A stretch of DNA of 64,000 bases from Phallusia mammillata (Eukaryota): NCBI GenBank assembly GCA_965637545.1, contig OZ281496.1:22692001-22756000 (forward strand). Direction: 5' to 3'. Positions within the stretch are counted from its first letter, which is position 1; each line of letters starts with the position of its first letter. The position numbers and the translations under genes are program-made. Below the pieces are notes generated by a model. The model did no database searches, was not told where the DNA came from, and saw only the letters and a program-made list of their open reading frames with translations. Positions 38,718 to 57,093 of the stretch are shown piece after piece.

Positions 38718-41700
38718 ATGTTTGAACCACTTAAAAAGAGGAAGCGTAGAATAGAGCACTGCGATAACGTCCCCAAAAGTGCAAATCACAACGGTTCTCT
38801 TGACCAATCAAATTCCTCATCCTCAATAATGACCAGTGGTAACCTCAAACACAAGATAGAGGTATGCCAAAAACTGTTTACAAATATTTAAAACGTTTTT
38901 ATGGTGTCTAAAAATTATTATAGTGCAGTTAAAGTCCTGAAATAAACTACTTCTATGATTATAAACATTTTTAATGTGGCTTTAGTTGCCTAAAATAATA
39001 TAAAACAGTTTAATTAAGGTTGGCAAGCCTATGTTACATTTATAAGAAGGTTTAACTTCCACCTTTTAACAAAAAATGCAATTTAATAGTGTAAGTGTAA
39101 TGTCATAGCAGACCACAAGAATCAGCCTGTGTAACTGGGTGGTGACCGACGGATCTGTCTACACTTATCAGATATATACAAAATGTACTCAAAAAGAGCA
39201 GCAGACGATCAGCGTCAGTGTAATGTTTTATTTTTGGAAAACTGAAATATTAATTTCGCCTATTTGGGCATTGTCAGTTTCGGTCTAAAAAGAAAAGAAC
39301 GATAAAAACACAAAAAAGCTAAAACGGTAAAATACTAAGCAAGTAACAGCCGAAAAATCAGACTAAAGCGATGAAAAACAGTGGAGAAGATCTGCAACTA
39401 ACACCAAAGCTGACTGACTGCTAAAAAAGGGGGTGGCAATAAAGGCGCCGTTAGCAAGCGAAAAAACTAACACATGTAAGAAGGCAATGACGTCATTAAG
39501 TGATAAGGGGTCGTGTGTTTTTATCGTTCTTTTCTTTTTAGACGGAAACTGACGATGCCCAAATAGGCGAAATTAATATTTCTGTTTTTCAAAAATAAAA
39601 CATTACACTGACGCTGATCGTCTGCTGCTCTTTTTGAGTACATTTTGTACACAATTTAATAGTGTGTATAGTATTTGACCAATATTTGAACTATTTGACA
39701 AGTATTTGACCAGTCAAATACCCAACCCTACTTTTATTATTTTACTAAAGGGGATCTTTTGAAAACTAGCAATGTCATTGCTCAGTTTTAAATAGTTAGG
39801 ATTTGAGATAAAATTATTTTACATGTTGTACTCTTTGAATCACCCTTGTTAAAGATCTGTATGTAAAAGTTGTGTAAGTTGGGGCATTAAAATTCACAAA
39901 TTGATTTTCCCTTTAAATTTTATTGGCCTTTAATTTTAGGCATTCCTTGAGCCAGAGGCCAACATCAATCAAAAACTGCCAAAAGAGCTTCTTTTAAGGA
40001 TATTTTCCTACCTTGATATTGTCACCCTCTGCAGATGTGCACAGGTACATTTATGGATTACATCTGCCTTATTGTCCCTTAGTTTAGTATGTAAGCTCTT
40101 GTACATACTCTGTTGGTTGTGCATTTAACATGTATTTTTATATAACTTTAAAACACAGCTATATATTGAGTAAAAACAGTGTACTTGGCACTGGTTGTGT
40201 TCAGCCCATCCCTTTGACAACATGAGTACATGTTTTTGGGGTTACAGCTTGTTCCAAAGTGTAATTGTACTGTATGGAGATATTCACACCTTCCAATATC
40301 TCGTAGATGCAGCATAGTTTGTAATGCTAGTAAACCAATAGCGCAGTAAAACGTTTATGAGTCTAAGCACAAAACACTCAAGGATTTTATTGTCACACGT
40401 TTGCTTTTCAAATATACTTTTATTGGGTTAAGAAGGTTTTATAGAGCAGGGCTGCTCAAACTTTTTTGCTCTGCGACCCCATTTTAAAACAGAAATTTTT
40501 ATGCGACCCCTTGATGGGTAAAGCCCAGGGATGCACAACCTTTTCGCTTTGACAGCCGCATCACAGATCTTTATTTAACCAACGACCGCCTGTTTGCTTG
40601 TGTTTTTAATTACTGATGGAAAGAAATATATTATATATATACCGTCTAATAGCGCCTAAAAAGCCTACATTAATTTCTAACTTGAAACACAGATTGACAG
40701 CCCTAGCTTTTATGACGTCGTAATCTATATTGTGACGCTTGTGGTATCTGCTTTTTCGCATTGTTTGCACACAATAGGCATAAAAACGCCTGGCGCATAT
40801 GGCTACTATGCTGGTAATATTCTTTTAAGTTCCACAAAATGTGTTTAGAACAGTTTGAAAATCAAAATATTTGACAAAAGAGTTTTTGTTTATGTCACGA
40901 CCGCCAGTACATGTATGCTAATAAACATGTTCACGGCCGCAGGTTGTGCATCCCTGATAGCCTATACACGGGAATAATTTTTAAGCAATAAATGTATGCA
41001 AGTATGCCATTTATTGTGACTGACGTAATAACACATTATGTTTCGCGACCCACAGTTTGAGAAGCCCTGTTATAGAGCACTTGTTGCTGAGTTTTAGACT
41101 TCATATGCCATAATGGGTAAAATTTCTTGTGTGTTCTAAGATGATTATAATATTTTTCAACAACCCTCTATGTAGCTCTATTTATGTGTTGTTACAAATA
41201 TGGTATAAGCGATTCAATAAATTTTCTTACGTTGTGTGTCCTAAGGTATTAATTATCTTTTTTAACAGCCTCTATGTAGCTCTATTTATGTGTTGTTACA
41301 CATATGATATAAGCCATTATAAATAAATTTTCTTATGTTCTGTGTCCCAAGGTATTAATATTTTTTTCAACAACCCTCTATATAACTCTATTGAAGTGTG
41401 TGCTCACAAATATGATAAAATAGGATGGTTATCAGTTCAAATTGCATAATAATGTTTGTTTGTTGACATTCAGGTCTCGAAACACTGGAATGTGTTGGCT
41501 TTGGATGGGAGTAATTGGCAGAGAGTGGATTTATTTGACTTTCAGTGTGTTGTTGTGGTAAGTGATTGCAGTAGAGATAAAAAAAATTGCTGCCATGGGT
41601 TTGCTTATAAGCCTAACCGATCATCATAGCTTTACTGCAAATGAAAGCAAAATTGATAAAACCGGGGTATTATAGAAATGCTTTTCACATGATCTGTACC

Positions 41701-41812
41701 TCTAATAGTAGGTATGTTTTGTAAATGATCTAATAAATAAAAAAGATTTATCAGGGCAATAGGATTTTAGCTTCAGTGTTACAAAGATGCAAGAAAACAC
41801 ACAAAAATTGTC

Positions 41813-41843
<31 letters not shown>

Positions 41844-44800
41844 CAAGTGTCAATTTTTGGTCAAGACTTTTCGATATATGTGTTCAGTAGATTGACCTTT
41901 GTTTTGTTAAACTGTTTTGGCAACTGTTGGTGTTAACACTTGATATAACATTGTTACACAATTTGCATCTTAACAATAGTGCAATTTAGGTTTAGCAGTT
42001 TGTTCCAAAGGTCTTTTCTCAACCTTCTTCATCAAATACCACAGTTTCAGTGGATATTGCTTGAATACCAATGTTTACATAGCATAAAAACCTCTACAAA
42101 TGATCATTTGTTTGTTCCCTGTATTAGCTGTGACCAAACATTCAATCAATAGCCAGTTGAACATATCAAGATATCAATATCACTTTTTTGGTTTTGAGAC
42201 TGTCACTTTGGCAGTTGGTTTCTTGTGTCTTATTTCACAAAAGGTTTAACACAAACCTGCCAGATGTACCTATATTGGTTGTTACCTTGAACATTGTCTG
42301 TGACAAAACGCTTGCATTTACCTTTTGTACACATTTTTATTTTAAAGTCAGGCCTTGAAAACCTGCCCGATACAGTTTATCCCTGGGCATTTGGTTAAGT
42401 TAGAAGGGTGATACAGATAACTGTGCTGCCAAATGTGCTGCCATGTTTCAAAGAAATGTACTTATTTTTGGCTTACAGACTTTATGTCGAAGGTACAACA
42501 ATGTTAAATGCATTTTGTTCTAACTGATAATAATTGTAAAGGACATTAGGTCATTTATAACAGTTCAGTAACCAAGGCATTGTTAAGCAACATTAGCATG
42601 TTAAAGTAGTTAGGTTGGTTAGGAAGCTAACATTGTTCTAAAGGTTTGGCATTTTTTTGGCATACACTATTTGACATTAGTTATATAAAACTGTTTTTTG
42701 TGTGTGGAAAAATCCATTTTAATGAGGTAAATCATGATTCGTTTTCCAGTGTCCTTTATTTTCACCCAGATCGATGGCAACCCTGGTTGTACAATACATA
42801 TAAGATATAACTGTGCTCAACAAAAATTCGTTTGTTTTTTTTACAGAAAAAAGTTGTATGTAGATATTTCATGGGGGATACTCTAAAATACCCAATTTAC
42901 TAATATACTTATGAAAGTGTTGACAATTAGGACTATAGGGTCGGGGTTAGGATTTGTAACTTATAATTTAATCTTAGATACCCTTTTGGGGCTAATATTC
43001 TTACAATCATTAACATGCAGTGTTTAGTACCATCCACAAGTATTATTAGTAGATTGCACATAAATTGTGTAGATTGCCTATTATTGAGGTGCCCTTTAAT
43101 AATATTCTATGATGTTTCTTTTTTAAGGGTCGTGTTGTGGAAAACCTATCTAAGAGATGTGGTGGTTTCCTGAAACAACTGTCGTTGCGCAGTTGTGAAA
43201 ATGTGGATGACAAAACCCTTCGTGTGTTTTCTCAAAACTGCAGAAACCTTGCCCAGCTTAATCTGTTCAAGTGCAAGAAAATAACTGACCAGTAAGTCAG
43301 ACATTTTCAATCTATTTGAATGAGGAAAATAAGAATAAAGGCATTTTTGGCAAAAGTACAAATGGTTTTATTTATAAGGGCCCAGGATAATGGAAATGTC
43401 GAGTTTGTGGCATTAAAAACCAATGTACATGATACCATTTTATTAAGGTTTTACGTTTGAACGTTTGTAACATCCCACTATAAAGGCTCCTTTTTTGCCA
43501 AATCACGTTCTCAATATCATTTTGCGATTATTTCATGAAAAAAAATATAGTAATGGATTAAAATACATTTACATGTATGTTTAAAACATTTTACTTAATA
43601 AGTGTTTTCAAAAATTATACTATGTCACCCTAAATGTTTTCCCCAGTCATACACTAGTTTCATAAAAGGAGATTAAGTTACAAAATGTCTAAATGCAATG
43701 TTTCCTGTGATACAACATACCTGTCATGAACTACATGTTTACACGAAAAGAAAATAAACAATATTACTTCAGAACATTTCCATATTGTGGTTGGGCGCAT
43801 CCATATCCCAACATATGATATATTACTGTTTGTCAATTGAGGCAATTTTCTTGTTTATGTTAGTAATGGGCTAAAACCATGGGGGTTTTGGATTGTCAAG
43901 CACCAAGTATTTCTTAGAAATTGTAAGTGCTTGAATGAACATGTTCAATGCATTGTGACATCATATCTGGCTTCATTGTAACGTTAGATTGGAATTTTGG
44001 TTTTTATTTTATGTGTCAAACTTTATTATTGGGCAAAGCATCAAAAACTAAACTGTTGGGCACCATGTTGAACTTATAAACTAGCACAACCCTGCCCTAC
44101 TAACTGTTAAAATAAATCTGACTTGAACAAATCTAAATACTTCACATAACTGGTTCCAACCTGGGTGGCCCATGGATGATGTTTTTTCCTCTATTGGTCT
44201 ATGCAATGGTTTTGGGGGTCCATAAAGGCAAGTAAAACATGTTTCTCAAAAAGCAATGGGTAAACTTTGCATAGGTATCCATAACCTTAAATTTTTTTAA
44301 AAAAGAGACAAGTGTTTGGGGCCACTCCTCTTTACGTTAAACAACCAGGTAATGTGTGTTTTTATGTTCAAACAATGGATAGTTATCAAAACTAAAATAC
44401 CTTACTGCTCCTATCGTACATTCTATCACACAAGCTTGCCTTTAGGAACTGAAGTGCTGCATAGGCAAAATATATTTATCTCAGTTCATAAGGATGGATG
44501 ACTTTAAGATTTAATGAATTTGTCTCAATAAGCATAAGGTTTATTACAGTCTTCATCCACTAAGCAATATGCTGGGAGATTCTGGTTTAAAGTTCAAATA
44601 TACTCTATTACAGATTTTCACAAGACTGTTTAGTTATGTATCAAATTTTTAAACACTGCTTTACTAACTTTTACTAGGACGCTTGTGAGTTTGGGAAAGA
44701 ACTGCCAACTACTGCGACATCTTGATATTTATTCCTGTCCACTTATCACTGATGAAGGGCTGGAACGATTAAGGTATACTGAAGCAGTTTTCAGGCCTAA

Positions 44801-47800
44801 CAAACAGCAGAGTTACATCCAATTTGGTACTGACTTTGTTTAAAAAAACACTACATGTGTTAATTATACAATCTTAGCTCTAGTATATATTGCATGATTA
44901 AAAAATACTTCTTGAAATTGTCAACAAATTTTGTTTAAATAAACGGAAAGAAGGAAAATTGTTTTGCACACTTTCACCAAAGAACATAGATTTTCTAATA
45001 GTAAAATACTATATAGAACATAGTAAAATAAATTTGTTTCCACTTAAATTTTTGATTCTTATCATATTTTCAATTGACAAATATGCTTTATAATTAAAAA
45101 GTACGGAAATGCCTGTCACACTAATTAATAAGGTTGAAACATTTTAAACAAATGTCATTTTTTGCAGTGATGGATGCCCTCAACTATCACATCTTGACAT
45201 TTCATGGTGTGACAAAATTTCTGATCGTGGAATCAAACACATAGCAACTGGCTGCCCAAAGTTAAAGCACCTTTATGCCAAAGGTGTTATTAAGGTACAG
45301 ATTTTGCAAAAATATGTAACTGAGTTTGAAATGTTTCCAATAGTACCTCAAAATGTTGAAAGTTTATGCTATAATTTGAGCAGCAAGTTTCTCTTTGATT
45401 TTTGTTTTGGCTTATAAGATTTTGCAAGGGTTATTTTGATAGACCTAACATGTTTTTTTTATCTTTGAAACCTGTGTTTGAAGGTAGGGAATTTGGTTAA
45501 ATTTTATGAAATCAATAGCATAGCATTGAACCATAAAGTATTTAGTTGTGATTGTCTGTTGAAAAGTGTGAAGTTTAATCGATAAGTGACACAAAATATT
45601 GTGGGACATGGTAAAAATAACAATTTTCAGACTTTGGTTTTAGTTTTCTCGATGAATGTTTGGAAATTTGCTTGAATGTGTAAAACTTCCTGTTTCAGTT
45701 TCACTTACGAAGCTTTAGTTTTTTAATCAATATTTCAGCAGTATGATTAAAAATGTGTTGATGTCTTGCAGTTAAACAGTGTCACTAAAGTCTGTTCATA
45801 CAATTTTTGCAATGTGACTCTTTATTAAGGTGTTTTTTCACACTTATATATATATATGCGTGTAATAGAGATTAACTATGCCCCCCTTGTGGTGTAATGT
45901 AGCTTTGTTCCATGCATTTGGTCAAAAAAGAGTGCTTTAAACTTTTTCAAATTTACACAGGTAATATATATCTATCAAAAGTTTATTGTCCCAAAGTTTG
46001 GCCCCACTTTACCCAGCGGTTTACCCACAGTTTTCTCAAAAAAGTTAAATTTAAAAGCATATAGAGCCAATAAATGATAAGCTGCAGACAGTGCACACTG
46101 TTTCGACCTATAAGGTCTCATCAGTGCAGCTGGTGACGAGAGATCGGCCGCATTGGCTAGTGCGGCCGATCTAGCCAATGCGGCCGATCTCTCGTCACCA
46201 GCTGCACTGATGAGACCTTATAGGTCGAAACAGTGTGCACTGTCTGCAAGTTAAATTTAATTCTAAAAGAAATATCATTGATTGTGCTTAATCTTTAAAA
46301 CTGACGGAGCATAAGTCTTACATCAAACATCTTATGTAAATAGCATCACATTTCACATTTACTTGAATTGTATTAGACCGCAAAACCTGTACATAATAAA
46401 ATAACATGATAAATATAAATGGTTGTAATTCAGAAGGATGTAAGTGCGAAGGATGAGATCCTACCAGATCGCTTTGCTTCAAGGCATGAATAATTAAACA
46501 GGACCCATGACTTTGTTTGTCCTGGGTGCTTTCCTTAGGCAAAGTTACTTGGCCCAGTTTAAACTAATTGTTCACATTATTTACTTGCACTGTCTCAAAA
46601 CTTTTCTGAAATGTTATTTTTTCTTCTAGTTTTTACGTGGTTGGTCCAAAAGTTGAAATTCACTTTTAAAAAAATCTGTTTCTTCTGCAAAAAATATATT
46701 TTTCTGGCTAAATGAGAGGTTTTCAATATTTTTCTTCTGACACAATCTTTTCTACTTGTCTTCAGCTTATATAACTCATTTTGAAGTATGTGCAGGCTTA
46801 TTTAACTCATGTGTTTTATAAAATATCTATTATGCTACATTTTTTACACCATGTGTATGTATATTTGGCATTGAAAACCAATGTTTAGAAGTTGTGCCAT
46901 TTTAAGAAGTTTAGCTGTAGTGATATTTATGCATATATTTGTAGGCATTTTTTTCTTTTCATTTGAGTCATGTTTTTTTCATATTTTTGCCACTTTTCAA
47001 TAATTTGTTTCTCCAGGGTACTATTTAGCAGCAAATTTACTTCTATACATCAAGTGTGTTTTGCCTCAATGTGAAGCTATCCAAGAGTTTATTGAGTCAT
47101 ATAATGTTTAAGAATGTATGGTCCTGACATGCACTTGAACTTAAATCATGAAACTTGTATTTCATGTAGGCTTCTATCTTTTATATTGTCTTTAGATCCT
47201 TTGCATTGTAAACTGAAACTTAAATTTTCTAAAGCGGATTTCTTTTCCATAAGTTTGTATCATGTTATTCAGGATAATGTTACCAAGTTACATATCCTGG
47301 TTTTAGTGAATGTAACTTCATGTAAAAAATTAATATTGCTAGTAAATAAGTCGTGGAAAAACCACAAGAATAGTCAATTTCATGCTTAATCTTACTATCT
47401 TTGCAATTTATTTCTTATTGACAAAATGTTTGGGTGATAGTTTGTCAGGAAATGGTTGATGGCAACAATTTATCACATGTGCTGGGTAGCTCAGAACACT
47501 TAATTTAGCTGCTTTAAGGCATGCAGATGGTGATTGTATATTGAGTTTTTTGATACCATAAGGTAATGTAGAAAAAAGTTAACTTCATTGAGGATTGATT
47601 TTGTTCAATACTGTTTGAGAATGAATCTATACTTTTTTCTGGCTGCTTTTTTCGGGATATCTTTGATTTGTTTCTATATCAGTACCCAATTTAATTATGT
47701 TTGCTCTTTAGACTTTGCTAAAGAAAAAACATTGTTATTCAGCAGCCTTAGTGATAGCTGTGTGAATGGGTGAATATAACATAACAACATCTTTCATTTT

Positions 47801-50800
47801 TCGGAAAATTTTGGACATGAATAAATTTCAAACATCTAAAATTGTACTTTTGATAATGCACTTGCATTGCAACCATAACTGTTTTGGAAAAAATCTCTTG
47901 TTAACGAGAAACAGACCTCTTTGTGTTCGTTTAATTAGTAGTAAGTGACGTAAAATTTAAACTACTATTGATCATGTTTTTGTTGTTGCAGATCACAAGC
48001 AGCTGTCTGGATCATCTGGCTAAAAACTGCACTGGCCTTGTAGTTTTAAATCTTCAAAAATGTGCTGTGAGTAAACTTTTTTGCTGACATTGCACCTTTA
48101 ACCAGTGGTGGAATTCAAAGTTTTTGTCAGTCGGTTCTATCACAAAAGTCAAAAAGTCTATTGACAGTTACCAGTAATGCTAACTGGTTCGCTGACCTCA
48201 GAAAATTTCGTGAGACAGTTCTATAGAACCGGTGCGAACCGACTGAATCCCACCACTGCCTTTAACATATTTTTTTACGATTAATTGGGTTGGTTTTTGA
48301 TTAAGGACTTTAATTTAATGACACTAGTCAAGCAAAACTGATGCAACCAGATGTACTAGGAATTTTGTTCAGGTTTTGATTTGCTAAGTCAAAATCAGCC
48401 TTCCATGCATTCATGTGCAATCAAGTGTGGTTGATATAAATTCCAACCTATAGTGTTTTGCACATTTGATAGCAGCTCAATAGGGATTGTACATTTAAAC
48501 TGGACTGCTCAATGTATATATTGTGAATTACAAAATTATTAGTGGCCACTTTCCCAATAGATTTTTATTCGAGAAATTTGCTTTATTTGTCCAACGCTAA
48601 TTTGTTTGTATCAGTAAATCAACCATTTTATATGTCAAGTTTTAATTACGCTAAACATTTTATAAGTTTAGTTTATAGGTGTATTAGTTTGAACAGTTCT
48701 TCATCACAATTTACTAATATTGGCAAACATGCCATAAGTTTGCCAATCTTGACATTTTTCTTTGAATTTTTTTGGTTTAAAACTTCTTTCTGAATAAATT
48801 TCTTTAGTATATATCAACTTCAATGGTGAAAATAATGGCCCAAATAGACAAAAAAGTGACATGCTTTATTTTTCGAATGTTTTGGCAAATGCTCATGCTA
48901 TCATCAGTGATATGAAGCCCACATTAGTTACACCCGTTTATATACATCTGAGTAACATCAGGGAGTGATAAAAAGGTGCAAAACAAGCGTCGCATAAAAA
49001 CGATAGATAAAAAGGTGCGCCGAAACGTTTGAAATATAAAGCATGTTGCTTTTTACGCCTATTTGGGCCGTTATTTTCACCATCAAACTTATGAACAGAT
49101 CCCTATATAATGTTCCAAAATATATCAACTTACTGTAGAACATATCCGATGAGGGAGTAATGAGGATTGCTGAGAGATGCCACGACCTAGAGACCATCTC
49201 CTTGTCCGACTGCAACATTGCAAATGACAATACACTCAAAGAGTTAGCACAGAACTGTCCGAAACTTAAAACCATTGAAGTGGCATCTTGTGGAAATTTG
49301 ACAGACGAGGGTTTTGTTGCCCTTGCTAAAGTAAGTAGCTGGTATTTGTCTGTTAATGCTAAATCACATGCTTTTTAACTTACTGTGGGGCAATAGTAAA
49401 AATGCATTTTTCCAAATTTTAATTCTTTTACCGGATAAAAAATAGGTAACTACTTGTGATTAAAAAATACTGAGATTTTTATAAACCTTGTACTAATTTT
49501 TGGTGCCAGGTAAAATGCTGCTTAAATGTGTATTGTGCAATATATTTCTTGCCTTGTGAACAGAAAACCCTAAGTCAGTTTGCAAAAAAACCTTTTAGTA
49601 TCTGTCATTACCTTATTTGGTTTTATTTTAAAGTTGTGGATCATTGGCATTAGCAAAATTGATATATCTGTTTTTCTATTTATGGTTCAAACACACATTT
49701 TTGAATAGTGTTAGCAAAAACAGGTCCATTAAACAGCTTTTACAAGCACTGTGGCTCTAGAATATACTTCTAATAAAGAAAAACTTTGCACTTATTTTTG
49801 CTACTTTGGGTAAAAATCAAATCAGCATAGTTTTCTCTAGTACACATATGCTACATATGGTATGTTTACCCTAGCTAGTACACATATACTACTAGTGCAA
49901 GCTTTCTTAACATCCAGTTTTTCACCAACAATATATGTCAATTAAATTGTTCTTGACATGATGGTAAAAATCAATATCTTCTATTTTAAGGCTGACAACC
50001 CAGCATTTGGCCTGAACAAAATGCTTGATTATCTTTTAAACAGTTCACAAAAGTGTAGACACCTGTCCTTTTAGCTAAAAAAATTAGTTAATTGCAAAGG
50101 AAACTACAAACAATGCTTTGAAAAACATATTTAGATGAATCTTACATTTTTTCTGCATATATTGATGTTTGTAAATTGCACTAGTGTTACTAAAAAGTTG
50201 CTAAAAATGTTTAGTAATTCAACACACTGTGACAAATTTACCCCTACTTTAAAGTGTCAAACCCATCAGCAAATTGAAAGTGTCATATTTTGTGTTTCTA
50301 CAGTCAGGTTTTCCTAAACTTAGTCCTACTATGGGGCATATAGTCAGTCAGGTCTCTACTGAAAATTCAGGCACCTAGTGATAGCATGTTGATTCAATTT
50401 CAGAACATTCTCAGTCAACACTAGCATTATATGAGTACTCAGGCATTTAGCTAATTTGTAGTTTGTGTAGCTAATTTTGTGTTCCATAAACATGTTAACT
50501 GCAAGAGAATGTGTGCTGCATTGTAACTGCAACCCAACAAATGTGTTTAAAAACTTGAACATTTATCTATGATATATTAAAATCGTATCTATAATTAGAT
50601 ATACATACATATTATTACTTACACATAGGCTTTTGGTGTGACATCCATATTATAAATCATGGGTGAAATGGGCACTGACCAGGTTCATAGATTTTACACA
50701 ATGTATATAATGTACTATAGTAGTTTGTGGCCCATTTGATTGCTAAATTTTGGATGCTTTTCAGAACTGTCCCCACTTGGAAAGACTGGACTTGGAGGAA

Positions 50801-53800
50801 TGTGTGCAAGTATCAGATAAAACCCTTCGTTATTTGTCACTTCACTGCTTGAAACTTACTGAACTGGTAAGTTGCATACAAATCTACAGCTTGTGAAGAC
50901 CATGTAGCTAACAGTGTCGTAGGTAGATGAAAATTTGGGGAGGGGCAAAATAGTTTGCTGTCTAATACAACTTTTTGCTAATGCTCGGTGTAACACGTGC
51001 TTTTTCCTAACACGTCAGTTGCCAAACTTTGGTTTGATGGGACAGCCAAAACGCTTTATTGATTTATTCCATGTCTACATAAATATAAAAAGCATGGATT
51101 TCAGCTTACAACTTGGTGCCAACAGTCATTTTTTCTAATTTACATATTCCTTTGATAGTTGAAAGACGAAACCACAATGATGAGGGACAAAATTACACTA
51201 AATTAAAGTTTCTCAATATACAACTTTGAAAATTTGGGTGGCTACGCCACTGGTAGCTCCCCGGCTACGCCACTGGTAGCTAAAGCTTTACTTTGCTACC
51301 TTGGTTTACCAATTGTGCTGTTACTATTTTACAGTTCATAGTGTTCTAGGGTTGCAGTGCTATATGCTCTTTTGTATTAGAGCTGGGTTGGTAATTGTAT
51401 GAAAGCTAATGTGTTAATGTGATCTTTTTTAAAGCTAAAAACAACCTAAAGTATTTCCATTAGAACCCTTTAAAAGCAACAATATTTCTGCACAAAAACT
51501 TTTAAAAACAGAAGTTTGTCAATTGTTGTGATCTGACCAGTCTGTTAATTATACATTTTTAGAAAATACTAAACTGTGTAGTATATCGTAAATCATGAGT
51601 CACCAGAGACTCAGTACAACAGATGGAGACAACAGTCGCGTATAATAACAGACTGAAAACTTTGACAAGTCTGGAGTCATCCACTGTTTTTTATGCTTAA
51701 ATATATATATTTCACCTAAGTAATAGGCATCATCAACAGTATCTAAAAACAAACAGCGCTAAAATTGTATGTCTGTTTTGAGAAAATAGTTTCAATGCTA
51801 AACTTTTTTCCAGACACTATCGCACTGTGAACTGATAACAGATGGAGGAATTCAAGATCTTGGGTCAGGACTGTGTGCAACTGACCACTTGGAGGTGCTA
51901 GAGTTGGACAACTGTCCTCTGATATCTGATGTGAGCTTAGATCATCTTGTTGGCTGTCAGGTAAATTTGAATCTACCTGGTGTTGTAAGTGTCATATACA
52001 CACATGTTCAAACAACTATTTATGCGAGTAAATCTAAGCTAGTGGTTCTCAACCTGTGGTACGTACATCATTAGTGGTACTAGTGATGGGACGATACCAG
52101 GTTTTGAAGCGAGTTCCGAGTACGAGTACCACATGTATATACCTTCGATACCGTGTACCAAGTACTTTAAGTGTAGTGTTGTACTTAGTTGTATATCACT
52201 GGCTAATTTATCTGCCATGGTCGGGGTACAGGCATGCACACACACATGCCCAAAAAATGTAATCACCACGTGATAGCGAAAAAATATACGTAACCTGACG
52301 GAACGATTTTGTGCTGTCCAAAGCAAATATTGGCAAAAAGTTGCCCATATTCTTATGGTGTAAATCTGCCTTCGGTACTCGCATGCTGGTATCGAAAACT
52401 GAGACAAAATATTTCGATACGGAGTACGAGTATCGATACCACTGAAATCGTTCGATACCATTAATACCGAGTACCGAGTACCAGGTACTCGTCCCATCAC
52501 TAAGTGGTACGCCAGACCTTTAGGTGGTATGCGAGTAGCTATCTGTTATATTTAATCAAGTCAAATCAAAATTGCAACTCTACCAACTTATCAGTCCTGG
52601 TTTTGGCGAAATCAGCACCTTGGACATTTTTTAGGAAGTGCCAACCTATGCTGGTGCACTGAACTGATTGAACACATAGTTTTTTGCTAATTGGCTGTTA
52701 AAAGCATTTATTTTTCCAAATGTTGTGTAAGTGGACAAAAGTATTTCTTGTTGCCTGCTTGTAAATGAGATTTTGTCGAAAGGTGTGCACCCCTTTTCTG
52801 TGTCCTGCTATCACATGGTGTATGCCTTATCAATTGCCATGTTACATTTTTCTCCATCATTTTGCATTTAAAAAAACAAACATGTTATTATGTGGTAGGG
52901 TCACTTACCTTCATATATTTACAGAATCTCATTCGCCTTGAACTGTACGACTGTCAACTTATCACTAGAGCAGGAATTATGCGACTACAGGTGTGTAAAT
53001 TTTTTTGTGACCATTGTGAAAAGCATGTTTTTGGTGGTGACCCATCACACCAATCAATTTATTTAACCCTTAAAGGCACTCATAAAGAACCAATGCTTTT
53101 TACTCATGATCAGTCATGAAAAAAGGTTTCAAAAATATATTTTATTTGACCCAATTTGCATAATAAAGTGATTACTTTTTGGTTTTAAATTTGTGTTTGC
53201 TGACATGTTATATTGTAAATCTACTCTTAAATTGTTAAACTCAAATTTTTGTTTAAAAAACGATTTATTTTGGTTTGATCAAAATGAAAAAATAATCCAA
53301 AACTGATTAAAGATGTATTTTTATGGCAATATTCCCCCAACATTTGGCAAAACAGAAAAAAATAGAAATTTAATCCTTTTTCAACCCATGTACACACCCT
53401 TACCAAAACCCCCAACAAAATTTACCAGTTTTACTAACTGCGCTTTTCTTTTTGTTTTCTTTTCTTTTTCGGTGTGCATAATCCCTGACGACGAATGAAT
53501 TCGCGCCGCTGCACATCAATTGGCCATCCACACCCAACTGCATGGCAACCCCCTAATTGACCCTACCTGCTCACCTACCAAAATACACAACTCATCGCTG
53601 TTGCAATTCTGTTTTGCCTGGCTTTTGGGGGGAACCCCCTTTCGGGCCATGTTGCTTTGTGTGTTTTTTTCGTGTGCGTTTGCTGTCATGCTGCCGAAAT
53701 CAGGCGCATCATCCTAATTTAGTGATTCACGCCTATTTTGCACCCGTAACGCCTCAGCCCTCTGTGGCACCGGCCCCGCAGAGGCTGTGCCCCGACTGCA

Positions 53801-53817
53801 GGTGTACGATATTATGA
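38718..53817 (+). CDS. FBXL20: F-box/LRR protein FBXL2/FBXL20 pro-orthologue, 12 coding exons (isoform with proximal last exon), 471 aa
   Basis: Exons 38718-38861, 39940-40044, 41474-41557, 43128-43291, 44678-44773, 45168-45294, 47992-48066, 49139-49330, 50765-50866, 51814-51960, 52925-52990, 53704-53817. F-box KLPKELLLRIFSYLDIVTLCRCAQVSKHWNVLALDGSNWQ, Cys-containing LRRs, and C-terminal HAYFAPVTP...CRCTIL (CAAX). The first coding exon is inferred. Confidence 0.94.
39179..39647. mobile_element. Foldback MITE with 133-bp TIRs and TA flanks (Tc1/mariner-like)
   Basis: 39179-39311 and 39515-39647 are inverted repeats with 4 mismatches, flanked by TA on both sides. Confidence 0.85.
40447..41069. 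mobile_element. hAT (Charlie-type) MITE containing a nested hAT MITE (40526-40956)
   Basis: Outer TIRs CAGGGCTGCTCAAAC / GTTTGAGAAGCCCTG with perfect TSD TTATAGAG. Inner TIRs CAGGGATGCACAACC / GGTTGTGCATCCCTG with an eroded TSD. Confidence 0.85.
41148..41420. repeat. Intronic tandem repeat, unit about 110-115 bp, about 2.4 copies
   Basis: The block CAACAACCCTCTATGTAGCTCTATTTATGTG...CCTAAGGTATTAAT recurs near 41158, 41266 and 41388. Confidence 0.8.
46080..46131 (-). ncRNA. Type I hammerhead ribozyme, minus-strand arm of the palindrome
   Basis: Minus strand: AGCTGCA-CTGATGA-GACCT[TAT]AGGTC-GAAA-CAGT[GTGC]ACTG-TC-TGCAGCT. It has a 7-bp stem I, 5-bp stem II, 5-bp stem III, an intact core and a GUC cleavage triplet. 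Confidence 0.85.
46083..46248. repeat. Perfect 78-bp inverted repeat (arms 46083-46160 and 46171-46248, 10-nt spacer)
   Basis: Base-by-base comparison of the arms shows no mismatch. Confidence 0.97.
46203..46248 (+). ncRNA. Type I hammerhead ribozyme, plus-strand arm (stem I truncated to 4 bp)
   Basis: TGCA-CTGATGA (46207-46213)-GACCT[TAT]AGGTC-GAAAC (46227-46231)...GTC (46242-46244)-TGCA. Confidence 0.8.
48103..48258. mobile_element. hAT MITE family A copy, 156 bp
   Basis: TIRs CAGTGGTGGAATTC / GAATCCCACCACTG. Perfect TSD CCTTTAAC at 48095-48102 and 48259-48266. Confidence 0.9.
50912..51275. mobile_element. hAT MITE (CAGTGGCGTAGCC-type TIR), 364 bp, right terminus duplicated
   Basis: Left CAGTGTCGTAGG and right GGCTACGCCACTG (present twice). 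Perfect TSD GTAGCTAA at 50904-50911 and 51276-51283. Confidence 0.8.
52081..52502. mobile_element. hAT MITE family B, copy 2, inserted into a Charlie-type element starting at about 52040
   Basis: Inverted homologue of 7476-7893 with perfect TSD AGTGGTAC at 52073-52080 and 52503-52510. The host begins TAGTGGTTCTCAACCTGTGGTAC. Confidence 0.9.
53432..53703 (+). promoter_or_regulatory. Distant branch point, polypyrimidine tract and AG-exclusion zone before the proximal FBXL last exon
   Basis: TACTAAC at 53432-53438 followed by a U/C tract to about 53470. No AG dinucleotide from 53429 to 53701. TGCATG at 53539-53544. Confidence 0.8.
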
Positions 53818-54311
53818 TGTGAACCGCTGGCATGTTTTAAAGTATGTAAACACTTACCTATTGATTTGCATCAGTTACCAGGTCAAATAGTGTGTAAACC
53901 GCTGAATAGGATATAGAATATATAAATTGGCATTATATGGAAAACCATCACTATTCTAGTTTACAACTGAAAAACGTTGTTGTCCAAAATTGAACTGGTT
54001 ATATCAGATAATAAAGATTGAAAATATGATCTTAGATAACTATAAATGTTGCTAAAATATGGCAATCTTCATATCCCAGTGTTTTCCAACCAGGGGTTCA
54101 TTGACCCCCAATGGTTCTTTAAAATGGTTTCAGGTGATCTGTGAAAGTATTTCAAGTCGTTTTAAGCAAAATCTGTCGATTGCATAGAAAAAAGTGCCTT
54201 ACATGCCTAAAAAGTTATTTTTGAAACCTATACGAAAACTATTCCTTTGCCAAAGTAACTTAAGCCTTAGAAGTAATTATGACGTGTCAATATATGATTA
54301 TGACATCACAG

Positions 54312-54431
54312 AACGCCTTGCCGAAGATCAAGATTCACGCGTACTTTGCCCACCAACCCGTGAACCCGTCCGCAGCCAACCAATATCGGGGCGGGAGACG
54401 TCGTTACTGCCGCTGTTGCGCCATCTTGTGA
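54312..54431 (+). CDS. FBXL20: Alternative (distal) last exon of FBXL2/20 encoding a second CAAX tail
   Basis: CAG|AAC... in phase 0 translates NALPKIKIHAYFAHQPVNPSAANQYRGGRRRYCRCCAIL*, clearly homologous to the proximal last exon. Confidence 0.85.
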   Translation, partial: NALPKIKIHAYFAHQPVNPSAANQYRGGRRRYCRCCAIL

Positions 54432-57093
54432 CCAACCCTGGACGGGAACGACATCCGCATAGCGGCGCCCTTGAGACATTACACATGCACTTCGCAGCCG
54501 ATTGGAAAACGCTATTCGACACCTTGCAACCGTTTTTTTGTTTTTGCCACTTTACACTCTTGTATTTTTCATAGAAAATCACTGGAATGTGGAAATTTCA
54601 ACTGCCTTGTAAGTTGTGGAGACAAACTGTTGGTTAAAAGTTTGTCTGGTCCGAAAAAAAATCAGAAGAAAAACAGCCTTTAGTTTACGGACAACGAAAG
54701 TTTCAAACCTCCAGTTTCAGCTTTCTTGAACGGTTTAGCCTTAAGTTAATTGAAACCTATTGTTTAATTGCACTTTTCAAACATGTTGTGGGTTGACATT
54801 GAAGTAATTGTTTTGGATTTCAATTTTAAACGATTTTTCCCTGGTGCTTTCAAACATACAAATATCAGTTAAGGGTAATATTTTGCGTGGGCTGTCCCTT
54901 TTGCAGAACAAAACTAGAATAATTTTATTCTTTGTTTTGTCTCAAATTTAGGAACATTAATGTTTGGTTCTATTCACTAAATTCACAGACACGGCCCTTG
55001 GAATGTGTATTGTATTTTTTTGGGTATAATTTTAAAACATTGTCCCTCTTATATGAAGTGCCAATAACATATCAACACACCTTGCTTTTTGGCACATATT
55101 GCTGTGCCATCGCAACCAGTTAAATGCAAAACTGTATACTTGGGCAAAAAATTCTCCACGCAAGCATACGGATTGGTACAGTACACCACATATGAACGAC
55201 AACCTTTTCTGTTCGTCTATCACACGCGTTGCAACATATGTATACATGCTATCGCTCTTTCTATATTGTATGTAGTACATAGGCAATCCCTTTCCTGTAG
55301 GCTTTACGCGTATATACATATAGCATGTAGCCTACATCGTTTCTACGCCACCAAATCGTGTTGCAAACATTTTGATGTTATTACTGCCCGGATTTTTTGC
55401 CAGCTTTATAATTTAGATACAAATCGTTGACAAGAAATGCATTGCTTACTGGTCGCATTCATGTCTGCGATGCTAATGAGTAATTATGTTAAATCACTAG
55501 CAAACTGTCACATTCTTTATGCCTTACACGCTGAAATCGGGTTCCCAACTAGCATTGCGCAACGAACCTTAACAACATAGTTTTCTTCCTTTTTTTCAGC
55601 AAATGGACAAATTAGCATTTAGTTTCAAATCGGCTAATCATTGATCTAAGCCTCTGTCATCGAAAATGTGTTGCCTGTTCGGAAGCAATTGTTTTCTATA
55701 GGTGCTGCAAAATTACATGTTTTGACTTTTTCTCAGATTTAAAAAATCTATTTGGTCACGGAAAAAATTCACTTTCTGTTTTGACAATTAACAAAAAACG
55801 ACCAAAGTTGTCTTCACTAGGCTTATTTCGCCTTGTCCAACAAGCCCGTGTAGGCCTATTCTGCTTTCAAAATTTGTGTGAAATCGCTTGAAGTGCAGCC
55901 GAATGCTCAAATTAAACCCAGTTTTGTACACAGAAGTTGTTTAAATTTGCCCTGAAAGACAAGTCTTGTAATCGGCTTGGCATCGAACGCCAATGTGTCA
56001 ACATAACTATTCCGTAATAACAGTTAAGTTGCAATGATTATGTATTTTTTAAACATAACTGGTCAAAAAATGTAGTTAAATTATGGCAACTTATTTCTTT
56101 TCTCGTTCACTGCTCTACTTTGTCGCAAATTTCAAGCGGAAATATTTCAAATCGTGTTTTTTATGTTCTGTACGTGTATTTGTATCCAATCTGTATCATA
56201 CCGTTTGCACGCTCTCGTTCTCTCACGTGCCCTGCTGTAGAGGATTGTTCGTTTCCTTTTTTCCTCTGTTCTTCTTTCTGCTTCTGTTTGCTTACGCTTT
56301 CCGCTCGTCAAGCATCACCCGTGAGTATTAAATACAGTAAAATGTATGCGTCAAAAATATCACCTGAATTGAATATTTAAGGATGTACTTTTAATTTAGA
56401 GATATCGTAGTTCATGGTTCTTCAGTGCATATTTCTGTGACTTTTTGAAATCTATAAGATAGGGTTTGTTGCCCTTTAGCGTTTAAATTGAAAACTTAAT
56501 CCTTCTATTTTCAAGCTGTTGCTGCGAGGCATAATATCTACTTTTTAGAGCAATTCTATTTTTGCACTGACGTTTCAACGTCCTATACAGCTGTTCTATA
56601 CGTCCTATACGACCTAGGTCGCCTTTTTCAGGGTAAATAACATTGAATGTGCGTAATTACATTTATTCTATTTTCCCATTTGAACAGATTGATCGATTTA
56701 TGTAACCTGACGTTGTAGCTAAAATAGCCCTCTGAATCCACATGTAATTACATTTGCAGAAAAAAATACGTGGGACTATGTTGGGCTGAAAATAAGATAA
56801 TGGAAAACCAAGATGGTCGAATGCCGTATTGATCACATTTGATAAAAGTGGATGTTACTTTTTGCAGAAGATATTTAACAATATGAAAAACGATCGTAGA
56901 CGATCAGACAAATTTGGTTTTGGCGCCAGGCGTCGCTGATTTTCTAATATCGTGGCGCCCACTATTTTGAAACTTGGTAAATAGCTTGCGATTTTAAGAC
57001 CAACGGTATTTAATGGAAAATCAGTCTTTTAAACTGAGGAAGGAAATTATCCATCTTTTGTTTTGCTGTTTTATGTTTTTATTAGTTGCAAAA

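What the first reader, a model, noticed from the sequence alone, without database searches (positions are those of the whole stretch)
53704..54431. Duplicated alternative last exons give FBXL2/20 two different CAAX tails
Seen: both exons accept in phase 0 from 52990 and share the IHAYFA core. Exon A ends QRLCPDCRCTIL and has its own AATAAA at 54010. Exon B ends in the polybasic RGGRRRYCRCCAIL and has an acceptor with almost no pyrimidine tract. Established: FBXL2 is targeted to membranes by CAAX geranylgeranylation, and vertebrates have two paralogues (FBXL2, FBXL20). Inference: one gene produces two membrane-targeting variants differing in charge and adjacent Cys (possible palmitoylation) through exon duplication instead of gene duplication.
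Basis: partly seen in the sequence, partly recalled or inferred. Interest (0 to 1): 0.78.

Follow-up and report, generated by a model that had tools for sequence, protein, structure and literature searches.

The report
Two lipid-anchor tails, one F-box gene
A single-copy FBXL2/20 ubiquitin-ligase gene, probably from a sea squirt, carries two old tandem copies of its membrane-anchor tail exon arranged like KRAS exons 4A and 4B, but every transcript seen so far encodes only the first tail.

Summary
Both tail exons are real. Exon A starts at 53704 and exon B at 54312. Each follows the 52990 donor in phase 0, matches the C-terminus of human FBXL2, and ends in a CaaL box (CTIL, CAIL).

The proposed architecture is wrong. 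In spliced contigs of four RNA-type runs from four studies, exon A is an internal 138-nt exon (53704-53841). Its TGA lies 24 nt before a GT donor, and that donor splices to exon B's acceptor. In every mRNA seen, exon B is therefore 3'UTR and the protein ends in tail A. This is the KRAS 4A/4B layout, not two terminal exons with separate poly(A) sites. No exon-A-skipping joint (52990 to 54312) was seen, but contigs drop rare forms.

Exon B still looks like maintained coding sequence. Between A and B, codon positions 1 and 2 are 57% identical and position 3 is 26%, which is chance level (p=0.003). B keeps the canonical GGRRRYCRCCAIL end. A keeps the canonical HAYFAPVTP half but lacks the Cys next to the prenylated Cys.

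In 80 other invertebrate loci no second tail exon was found.

Most likely tail B is a minor or tissue-restricted isoform made by skipping exon A. That is inferred, not shown.

The parts
39964..52990 (+). Body of the FBXL2/20 orthologue. F-box exon at 39964-40044. LRR exons near 41477, 43128, 44679, 45169, 47992 and 49139-49330, then 50762-50866, 51814-51960 and 52925-52990. Upstream exon borders are approximate.
   Evidence: tblastn and blastp against FBXL20 proteins give 59% identity over about 400 aa to Xenopus FBXL20. Exon borders from 50866 onward come from RNA contig joints.
52925..52990 (+). Last constitutive coding exon (22 codons, NLIRLELYDCQLITRAGIMRLQ). It ends in phase 0 with donor CAG|gtgtgt.
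   Evidence: Joints 51960->52925 and 52990->53704 in 4 of 4 runs. The same intron position occurs in other invertebrate loci.
53429..53701 (+). 273-nt AG-free zone before the exon A acceptor. It starts just after TACTAAC (53432-53438) and a T-rich pyrimidine tract (53440-53472). This points to a distant branch point.
   Evidence: It is the longest AG-free run in the window. The next longest is 152 nt, and 0.004 runs of this length are expected.
53704..53841 (+). Exon A, an internal 138-nt exon. It has 37 codons of tail A (...HAYFAPVTPQPSV...QRLCPDCRCTIL), TGA at 53815-53817, then 24 nt and the donor AAA|gtatgt.
   Evidence: Joints 52990->53704 and 53841->54312 in 4 of 4 runs from 4 studies. 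Match to the FBXL2 C-terminus, E 2.7e-5. Unique in the genome.
53842..54311 (+). 470-nt intron between exons A and B. It contains the AATAAA at 54010.
   Evidence: Removed in the main contig of all 4 runs. Only two low-depth pieces in one run (X17: 53828-53999 and 54128-54279) lie in it, as expected of unspliced RNA.
54312..54431 (+). Coding-capable start of exon B. It has 39 codons of tail B (NALPKIKIHAYFAHQ...RGGRRRYCRCCAIL) plus TGA. It is in frame with 52990 if exon A is skipped, and is untranslated in the mRNAs seen.
   Evidence: Match to the FBXL2 C-terminus, E 1.6e-4. The codon-position pattern against exon A indicates coding evolution. Unique in the genome.
54432..56346 (+). Shared 3'UTR of about 1.9 kb. 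ATTAAA lies at 56327-56332, and the contigs end at 56314-56346.
   Evidence: Contig pieces; sequence; hexamer list.
53124..53143 (+). Left box of an intron-intron complementarity that brackets exon A. Its partner is at 54210-54229. 18 of 20 nt pair, and 14 are perfect.
   Evidence: the repeat finder pair I2. None of 200 block shuffles reaches 18/20. Function untested.
54210..54229 (+). Right box of the same complementarity, 83 nt before the exon B acceptor.

Best explanation
The gene is the single FBXL2/20 orthologue of this animal. Its last, tail-coding exon was duplicated in tandem long ago.

Shown: the upstream copy (exon A, 53704-53841) is an internal exon that carries its own stop codon. 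In the predominant mRNA it is spliced between the 52990 donor and the exon B acceptor. The protein then ends in tail A (...CPDCRCTIL), and exon B serves only as 3'UTR. The stop lies 24 nt before the last junction, too close to trigger nonsense-mediated decay under the 50-55-nt rule established in vertebrates.

Inferred: skipping exon A joins 52990 to 54312 in frame and gives a protein ending in tail B (...RGGRRRYCRCCAIL). This would be the KRAS 4A/4B mechanism applied to an F-box protein.

Inferred from the human data: both tails end in CaaL and should be geranylgeranylated.
- Tail B keeps the canonical CxCC arrangement. That includes the Cys next to the prenyl-Cys, which human FBXL2 needs for palmitoylation-dependent plasma-membrane delivery. 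It also has a net charge of about +5.
- Tail A lacks that adjacent Cys, has an Asp, and has a net charge of about +1.
- The two forms should therefore sit on different membranes, with A more on ER and endomembranes and B more on plasma membrane and vesicles.

The 273-nt AG-free zone with a distant branch point before exon A suggests that inclusion of exon A is regulated.
For: -: in 4 of 4 RNA-type runs from 4 studies, one contig carries the joints 50866->51814, 51960->52925, 52990->53704 and 53841->54312, all GT..AG, and runs on to about 56346.
- both tails are homologous to the FBXL2/20 C-terminus. They share 57-60% identity with vertebrate tails but only 43% with each other.
- over 35 aligned codons of A against B, identity is 57% at position 1, 57% at position 2 and 26% at position 3 (Fisher p=0.003). 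pS is 0.89 (saturated) and pN is 0.42. Ten of the 15 conserved residues use different codons. In the ungapped first 22 codons the matches are 13, 14 and 6. Both copies were therefore kept as protein-coding long after the duplication.
- the last 13 residues of tail B match the canonical invertebrate end (GGRRRYCRCC.IL).
- the AG-free zone is unique in the window.
- the gene and both tail exons are single-copy in the genome.
- PMC9988375: human FBXL2 is prenylated at C420 and palmitoylated at C417 and C419, and C419 is needed for plasma-membrane localisation.
- PMC5945503: in KRAS, the included exon 4A carries the stop and exon 4B is then untranslated.
Against: - No 52990->54312 joint was seen in any of the four runs. 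Contigs run unbroken through exon A, so a skipped form is rare or absent in those samples.
- These were assembled contigs, not raw reads, so rare forms and tissue-specific forms cannot be judged.
- No tunicate orthologue could be fetched, so conservation of the exon pair in relatives is untested.
- The codon-position test would also fit an exon B that was coding for a long time and was silenced only recently.
- Lipidation and localisation are inferred from human FBXL2, not tested.
Confidence: 0.6

Rival explanations
1. Exon B is a fossil. It was the original last coding exon and was displaced when exon A, with its own stop and a new donor, was fixed upstream. Today it serves only as the acceptor and 3'UTR, and the animal makes tail A only.
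For: All transcripts seen include exon A, and none skips it. The middle of exon B departs from the otherwise highly conserved APVTPPPSV motif. Short-ORF searches found no tail-B-bearing protein fragment in the protein collection.
Against: Synonymous sites between A and B are saturated, yet B keeps an open frame from its acceptor and an exact canonical CRCCAIL end, and positions 1 and 2 remain conserved. A sequence that had been neutral since the duplication would not look like this, so silencing would have to be recent. Contigs cannot exclude a minor isoform.
Confidence: 0.28
2. One reading: two alternative terminal exons. Exon A ends transcripts at its own poly(A) site after the AATAAA at 54010, and exon B is reached directly from 52990.
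For: AATAAA is present at 54010. One run has a low-depth piece at 53828-53999 that runs past the exon A donor.
Against: In 4 of 4 runs exon A is spliced at 53841 to 54312. The same run that has the 53828-53999 piece also covers 54128-54279, beyond the hexamer, as unspliced RNA would. AATAAA occurs 80 times on this strand of the AT-rich window. No 52990->54312 joint was seen.
Confidence: 0.07
3. Read-through of the exon A TGA gives one long protein. Tail A would be followed by 8 residues and tail B, which is in frame because exon A is 138 nt.
For: The frames are continuous across the A-B junction.
Against: The stop context TGA-T is not, from general knowledge, one that favours read-through. In-frame continuity has a 1-in-3 chance. 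The internal tail A would lose its CaaX function. There is no supporting data.
Confidence: 0.02

Closest known systems
KRAS exons 4A/4B (vertebrates)
   Same: Two homologous tail-coding exons lie in tandem. The upstream one is a cassette exon with its own stop codon, and when it is included the downstream exon is transcribed but untranslated (PMC5945503). The tails end in CaaX boxes and differ in the second membrane signal, either nearby cysteines or a polybasic stretch.
   Different: This is an F-box/LRR substrate receptor, not a GTPase. Both tails here keep upstream cysteines. Here the exon-included form dominates, whereas in KRAS the 4A-included form is the minor one. The skipped form has not yet been seen here.
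CDC42 ubiquitous and brain isoforms (alternative C-terminal exons, CaaX versus CCaX)
   Same: One gene gives two lipid-anchor tails that set different localisation (PMC10883850). Splicing is controlled by a polypyrimidine-tract binding protein (PMC4745753). Here a long T-rich tract with a distant branch point precedes exon A.
   Different: The CDC42 isoform mRNAs have different 3'UTRs (bioRxiv 10.1101/366369). Here both forms would share one 3'UTR. Regulation by a PTB-like factor is only a lead.
Vertebrate FBXL2 and FBXL20 (SCRAPPER) paralogues
   Same: Same protein family. The body is 59% identical to Xenopus FBXL20. The tail has the same HAYFAP...CRCC-aaL build. Human FBXL2 is geranylgeranylated at the CaaX Cys and palmitoylated at the two upstream Cys (PMC9988375).
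   Different: Vertebrates have two genes whose tails are nearly the same. This animal has one gene with two clearly different tails. The duplication therefore concerns only the targeting end, not the substrate-binding body.

Membership tests
FBXL2/FBXL20 orthologue | N-terminal F-box followed by a full set of cysteine-containing leucine-rich repeats | tested here: met
   The F-box exon is 87% identical to FBXL20. The joined exons are 59% identical over about 400 aa to Xenopus FBXL20, and they fall inside the FBXL2/20 group in a tree.
FBXL2/FBXL20 orthologue | C-terminal tail of the HAYFAP...CxCC-aaL type ending in a CaaX box with X = L | tested here: met
   Both tails hit the C-terminus of PDB 6o60 chain C and align with vertebrate and invertebrate tails. 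They end in CTIL and CAIL.
FBXL2/FBXL20 orthologue | Geranylgeranylation and membrane association of the protein | not testable with these tools
   Inferred from the CaaL boxes and from work on human FBXL2 (PMC9988375).
KRAS 4A/4B-type tail switch (stop-bearing cassette exon before the last exon) | Two homologous tail exons in tandem, both frame-compatible with the same upstream donor | tested here: met
   Sequence and translation; homology.
KRAS 4A/4B-type tail switch (stop-bearing cassette exon before the last exon) | The included upstream exon carries the stop and is spliced onto the downstream exon, which then is 3'UTR | tested here: met
   Joints 52990->53704 and 53841->54312 in 4 of 4 runs. 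The TGA lies 24 nt before the junction.
KRAS 4A/4B-type tail switch (stop-bearing cassette exon before the last exon) | An mRNA that skips the upstream exon exists, so that the downstream tail is translated | tested here: inconclusive
   No 52990->54312 joint in four contig sets, but contigs drop rare variants. The codon-position pattern argues that exon B is coding.
   Exon A has a used donor at 53841 in 4 of 4 runs. No contig ends at the 54010 hexamer. All contigs end near 56314-56346 after ATTAAA 56327.

The most novel reading that the evidence does not exclude
A chordate relative with a single FBXL2/20 gene sends one SCF ubiquitin ligase to two membrane compartments by a regulated KRAS-4A/4B-like exon switch. 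The default tail lacks the palmitoyl-Cys next to the prenyl site. The rare tail, perhaps neural or stage-specific, is the canonical polybasic, doubly palmitoylatable one. This would be an independent route to the kind of diversity that vertebrates gained by duplicating the whole gene.
Probability: 0.4. Interest if true: 0.6.

Novelty: new member of a known kind. Interest (0 to 1): 0.42.

Why it matters
FBXL2 and FBXL20 act only where their lipid tail places them. Examples are the ER calcium channel IP3R3 and the lipid kinase Vps34. In human cells, removing the cysteine next to the CaaX box shifts FBXL2 from the plasma membrane to the ER and changes which substrate it degrades (PMC9988375).

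A natural gene that offers both kinds of tail on one ligase body would be a simple system for asking how compartment choice sets substrate choice. It would also extend the KRAS/CDC42 type of tail switch from small GTPases to ubiquitin ligases.

For annotation, the practical point is that exon A is internal. The conserved-looking reading frame at 54312-54431 lies in the 3'UTR of the main mRNA.

Tried and rejected
1. Short-ORF word searches with the stop-to-stop frames around tail B and tail A found nothing.
2. The representative search with the 64-aa LRR exon and a word search with a bird FBXL20 core returned only vertebrate proteins in the listed ranks. No tunicate orthologue was reached.
3. 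I tried to build a profile from this gene's own exon pieces on a scaffold protein (alignments A1 and A2). MAFFT stacked the repeats on one another, so the profile was not used.
4. A search or exact look-up with the full spliced protein was left out.
5. Looking up the source of P0094 gave only a run accession.
6. A whole-intron duplex energy (one search timed out) is not a meaningful test and was dropped. The local 20-mer test was kept as a weak lead.
7. Rfam found nothing in 51900-56700.
8. A possible internal donor in exon A (CAG|GTGTAC at 53801/53802) would shift the frame into exon B, so it was rejected.
9. Stop-codon read-through was considered and is given low odds.
10. Variants between runs are too few to test constraint on exon B. 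None falls in its 120 nt, against about 0.8 expected from the 3'UTR rate.
11. None of the metagenome contigs fetched looked human. Their tails all differ from the mammalian FBXL2 and FBXL20 tails.
Full report
**What is in the sequence.** The + strand from about 39.9 kb to 56.3 kb holds one F-box/LRR gene.
- Exon-sized open frames carry an F-box (39964-40044) and a run of cysteine-containing leucine-rich repeats.
- Joined together, they are 59% identical over about 400 residues to Xenopus FBXL20. In a tree they fall inside the FBXL2/20 group.
- In the 240-Mb genome, the best other matches to the 64-residue LRR exon are only 33-37% identical, so there is one FBXL2/20 gene.
- Other notes of this scan call the genome a sea squirt. 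I did not test that.

**The observation.**
- The exon 52925-52990 ends in phase 0 at CAG|gtgtgt.
- Exon A begins at 53704 and encodes 37 residues ending QRLCPDCRCTIL, with TGA at 53815-53817.
- Exon B begins at 54312 and encodes 39 residues ending RGGRRRYCRCCAIL, with TGA at 54429-54431.
- Each tail on its own hits only one solved protein, the C-terminus of human FBXL2 (6o60 chain C), with E 2.7e-5 and 1.6e-4.
- Each tail exon occurs once in the genome.

**How the exons are used.** I searched for runs holding 53704-55200 and laid four RNA-type contig sets from four studies on 50700-56600.
- All four give the same picture. One contig per run carries the joints 50866->51814, 51960->52925, 52990->53704 and 53841->54312, each with GT..AG ends.
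- The contigs then run without a break to 56314-56346, just after an ATTAAA at 56327.
- Exon A is thus an internal 138-nt exon. Its stop is followed by 24 nt and the donor AAA|gtatgt, which is spliced to the exon B acceptor.
- In these mRNAs the protein ends in tail A, and exon B is the first part of a 3'UTR of about 2 kb.
- The AATAAA at 54010 lies in the removed 470-nt intron. Only one run has two low-depth pieces there, one on each side of the hexamer, as unspliced RNA would give. The hexamer is common in this AT-rich window, with 80 copies on this strand.
- The joint that would make tail B (52990->54312) was not seen.
- These are assembled contigs, which keep the main path and drop rare ones. 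They show that exon A inclusion dominates in the samples. They do not show that skipping never happens.

**Is exon B still a coding exon?** Three lines of evidence say it has been coding for most of its history.
- *Codon positions.* In the 35 alignable codons of A and B, identity is 57% at position 1, 57% at position 2 and 26% at position 3. The last figure is chance level, and the contrast gives p=0.003. Synonymous differences are saturated (pS 0.89) while pN is 0.42. Ten of the 15 conserved residues are written with different codons. The same pattern holds in the ungapped first 22 codons, with 13, 14 and 6 matches. The duplication is therefore old, and both copies were held by selection on the protein in exactly the frame set by their acceptors.
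- *Complementary conservation.* A scan of public metagenome contigs with the tail alignment gave 184 matching contigs and 80 loci, with about 25 distinct tails, none human-like. All are of one canonical kind..LPNIKVHAYFAPVTPPPSVGGGR(Q/R)RYCRCC.IL. Tail A keeps the first half (HAYFAPVTPQPSV) but has a changed end. Tail B has a changed middle but keeps the end, GGRRRYCRCCAIL. A and B are each 57-60% identical to vertebrate tails but only 43% identical to each other.
- *Open frame.* The B frame is open from the acceptor to a perfect CaaL box.

An exon B that has been silent since the duplication is therefore very unlikely. A recent loss of use cannot be excluded.

**Origin.**
- In seven of the distinct foreign tails, the intron before the tail exon lies at the same phase-0 place as here.
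- In none of the 80 loci was a second tail exon found. Forty of these loci have at least 1 kb of flank on both sides.
- A single terminal tail exon is thus the older state, and the tandem pair is specific to this lineage.
- How far the pair extends among sea squirts could not be tested, because no tunicate sequence was reachable with the tools.

**Signs of regulation.**
- The 273 nt before the exon A acceptor contain no AG. This is the longest AG-free run in the window, where the next is 152 nt and 0.004 runs of this length are expected.
- The zone starts right after TACTAAC (53432-53438) and a long T-rich tract (53440-53472). That is the layout of a distant branch point.
- From general knowledge of vertebrate genes, this layout is enriched at regulated exons.
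- A 20-nt box in the upstream intron (53124-53143) pairs at 18 of 20 positions with a box 83 nt before exon B (54210-54229). That is more than any of 200 shuffles. Such pairing could loop out exon A, but this is only a lead.

**Likely mechanism.** The layout is that of KRAS. There, the included exon 4A carries the stop and exon 4B is then transcribed but not translated, while skipping 4A gives the 4B tail (PMC5945503).
- *Shown here:* the included form.
- *Inferred:* the skipped form, which joins 52990 to 54312 in frame.
- *Lipidation, inferred from human FBXL2.* Both tails end in CaaL, the geranylgeranyl type. In human FBXL2 the CaaX Cys420 is prenylated and Cys417 and Cys419 are palmitoylated. 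Cys419, next to the prenyl site, is needed to reach the plasma membrane, and without it the protein stays on the ER and degrades IP3R3 better (PMC9988375).
- *Tail B* has exactly this C-x-C-C arrangement, plus five arginines in its last 16 residues.
- *Tail A* has Arg in place of the adjacent Cys, cysteines at -6 and -9, an Asp, and a net charge of about +1.
- *Prediction:* tail A favours ER and endomembranes, and tail B favours plasma membrane and vesicles. This is inference.

**Comparison and novelty.** Switching lipid-anchor tails by alternative C-terminal exons is known for KRAS and CDC42 (PMC10883850, PMC4745753). I found no paper linking FBXL20 and ascidians, and no report of alternative CaaX tails for FBXL2/20 among the papers seen. 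This is a new member of a known kind, with the second isoform still to be shown.

**Verdict.**
- Odds are about 0.6 that tail B is made by skipping exon A, and about 0.3 that exon B is now only 3'UTR.

Noticed in passing
window 52079-52510 (intron between exons 51814-51960 and 52925-52990): An interspersed repeat of about 425 nt. The first look found over 1000 candidate copies in the genome, and the 40 scored are 87-92% identical. In the RNA-type runs it has 10-40 times the depth of the host gene and many loose ends. No Rfam match.
   Followed up: partly
window 53124-53143 and 54210-54229: Complementary boxes in the two introns flanking exon A (18 of 20 nt, 14 perfect), above all 200 shuffles. 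They could loop out exon A or favour back-splicing. Untested.
   Followed up: partly
P0163 (Narcine bancroftii FBXL20-like isoform X2): This predicted ray protein leaves the canonical tail after HAYFAPVTPP and ends without a CaaX box. Vertebrate FBXL20 may therefore also have a predicted tail variant without a lipid anchor.
   Followed up: no
L034, L036, L047 and about 20 more metagenome loci: One group of invertebrate contigs has the canonical tail but ends in CAIV. X = V is an unusual last residue for a geranylgeranylated FBXL2/20 tail.
   Followed up: no
L006, L009, L011, L017, L041, L044, L077: In these metagenome records the tail follows the preceding exon without an intron. They are either transcript-derived contigs or come from species that lost this intron.
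   Followed up: no
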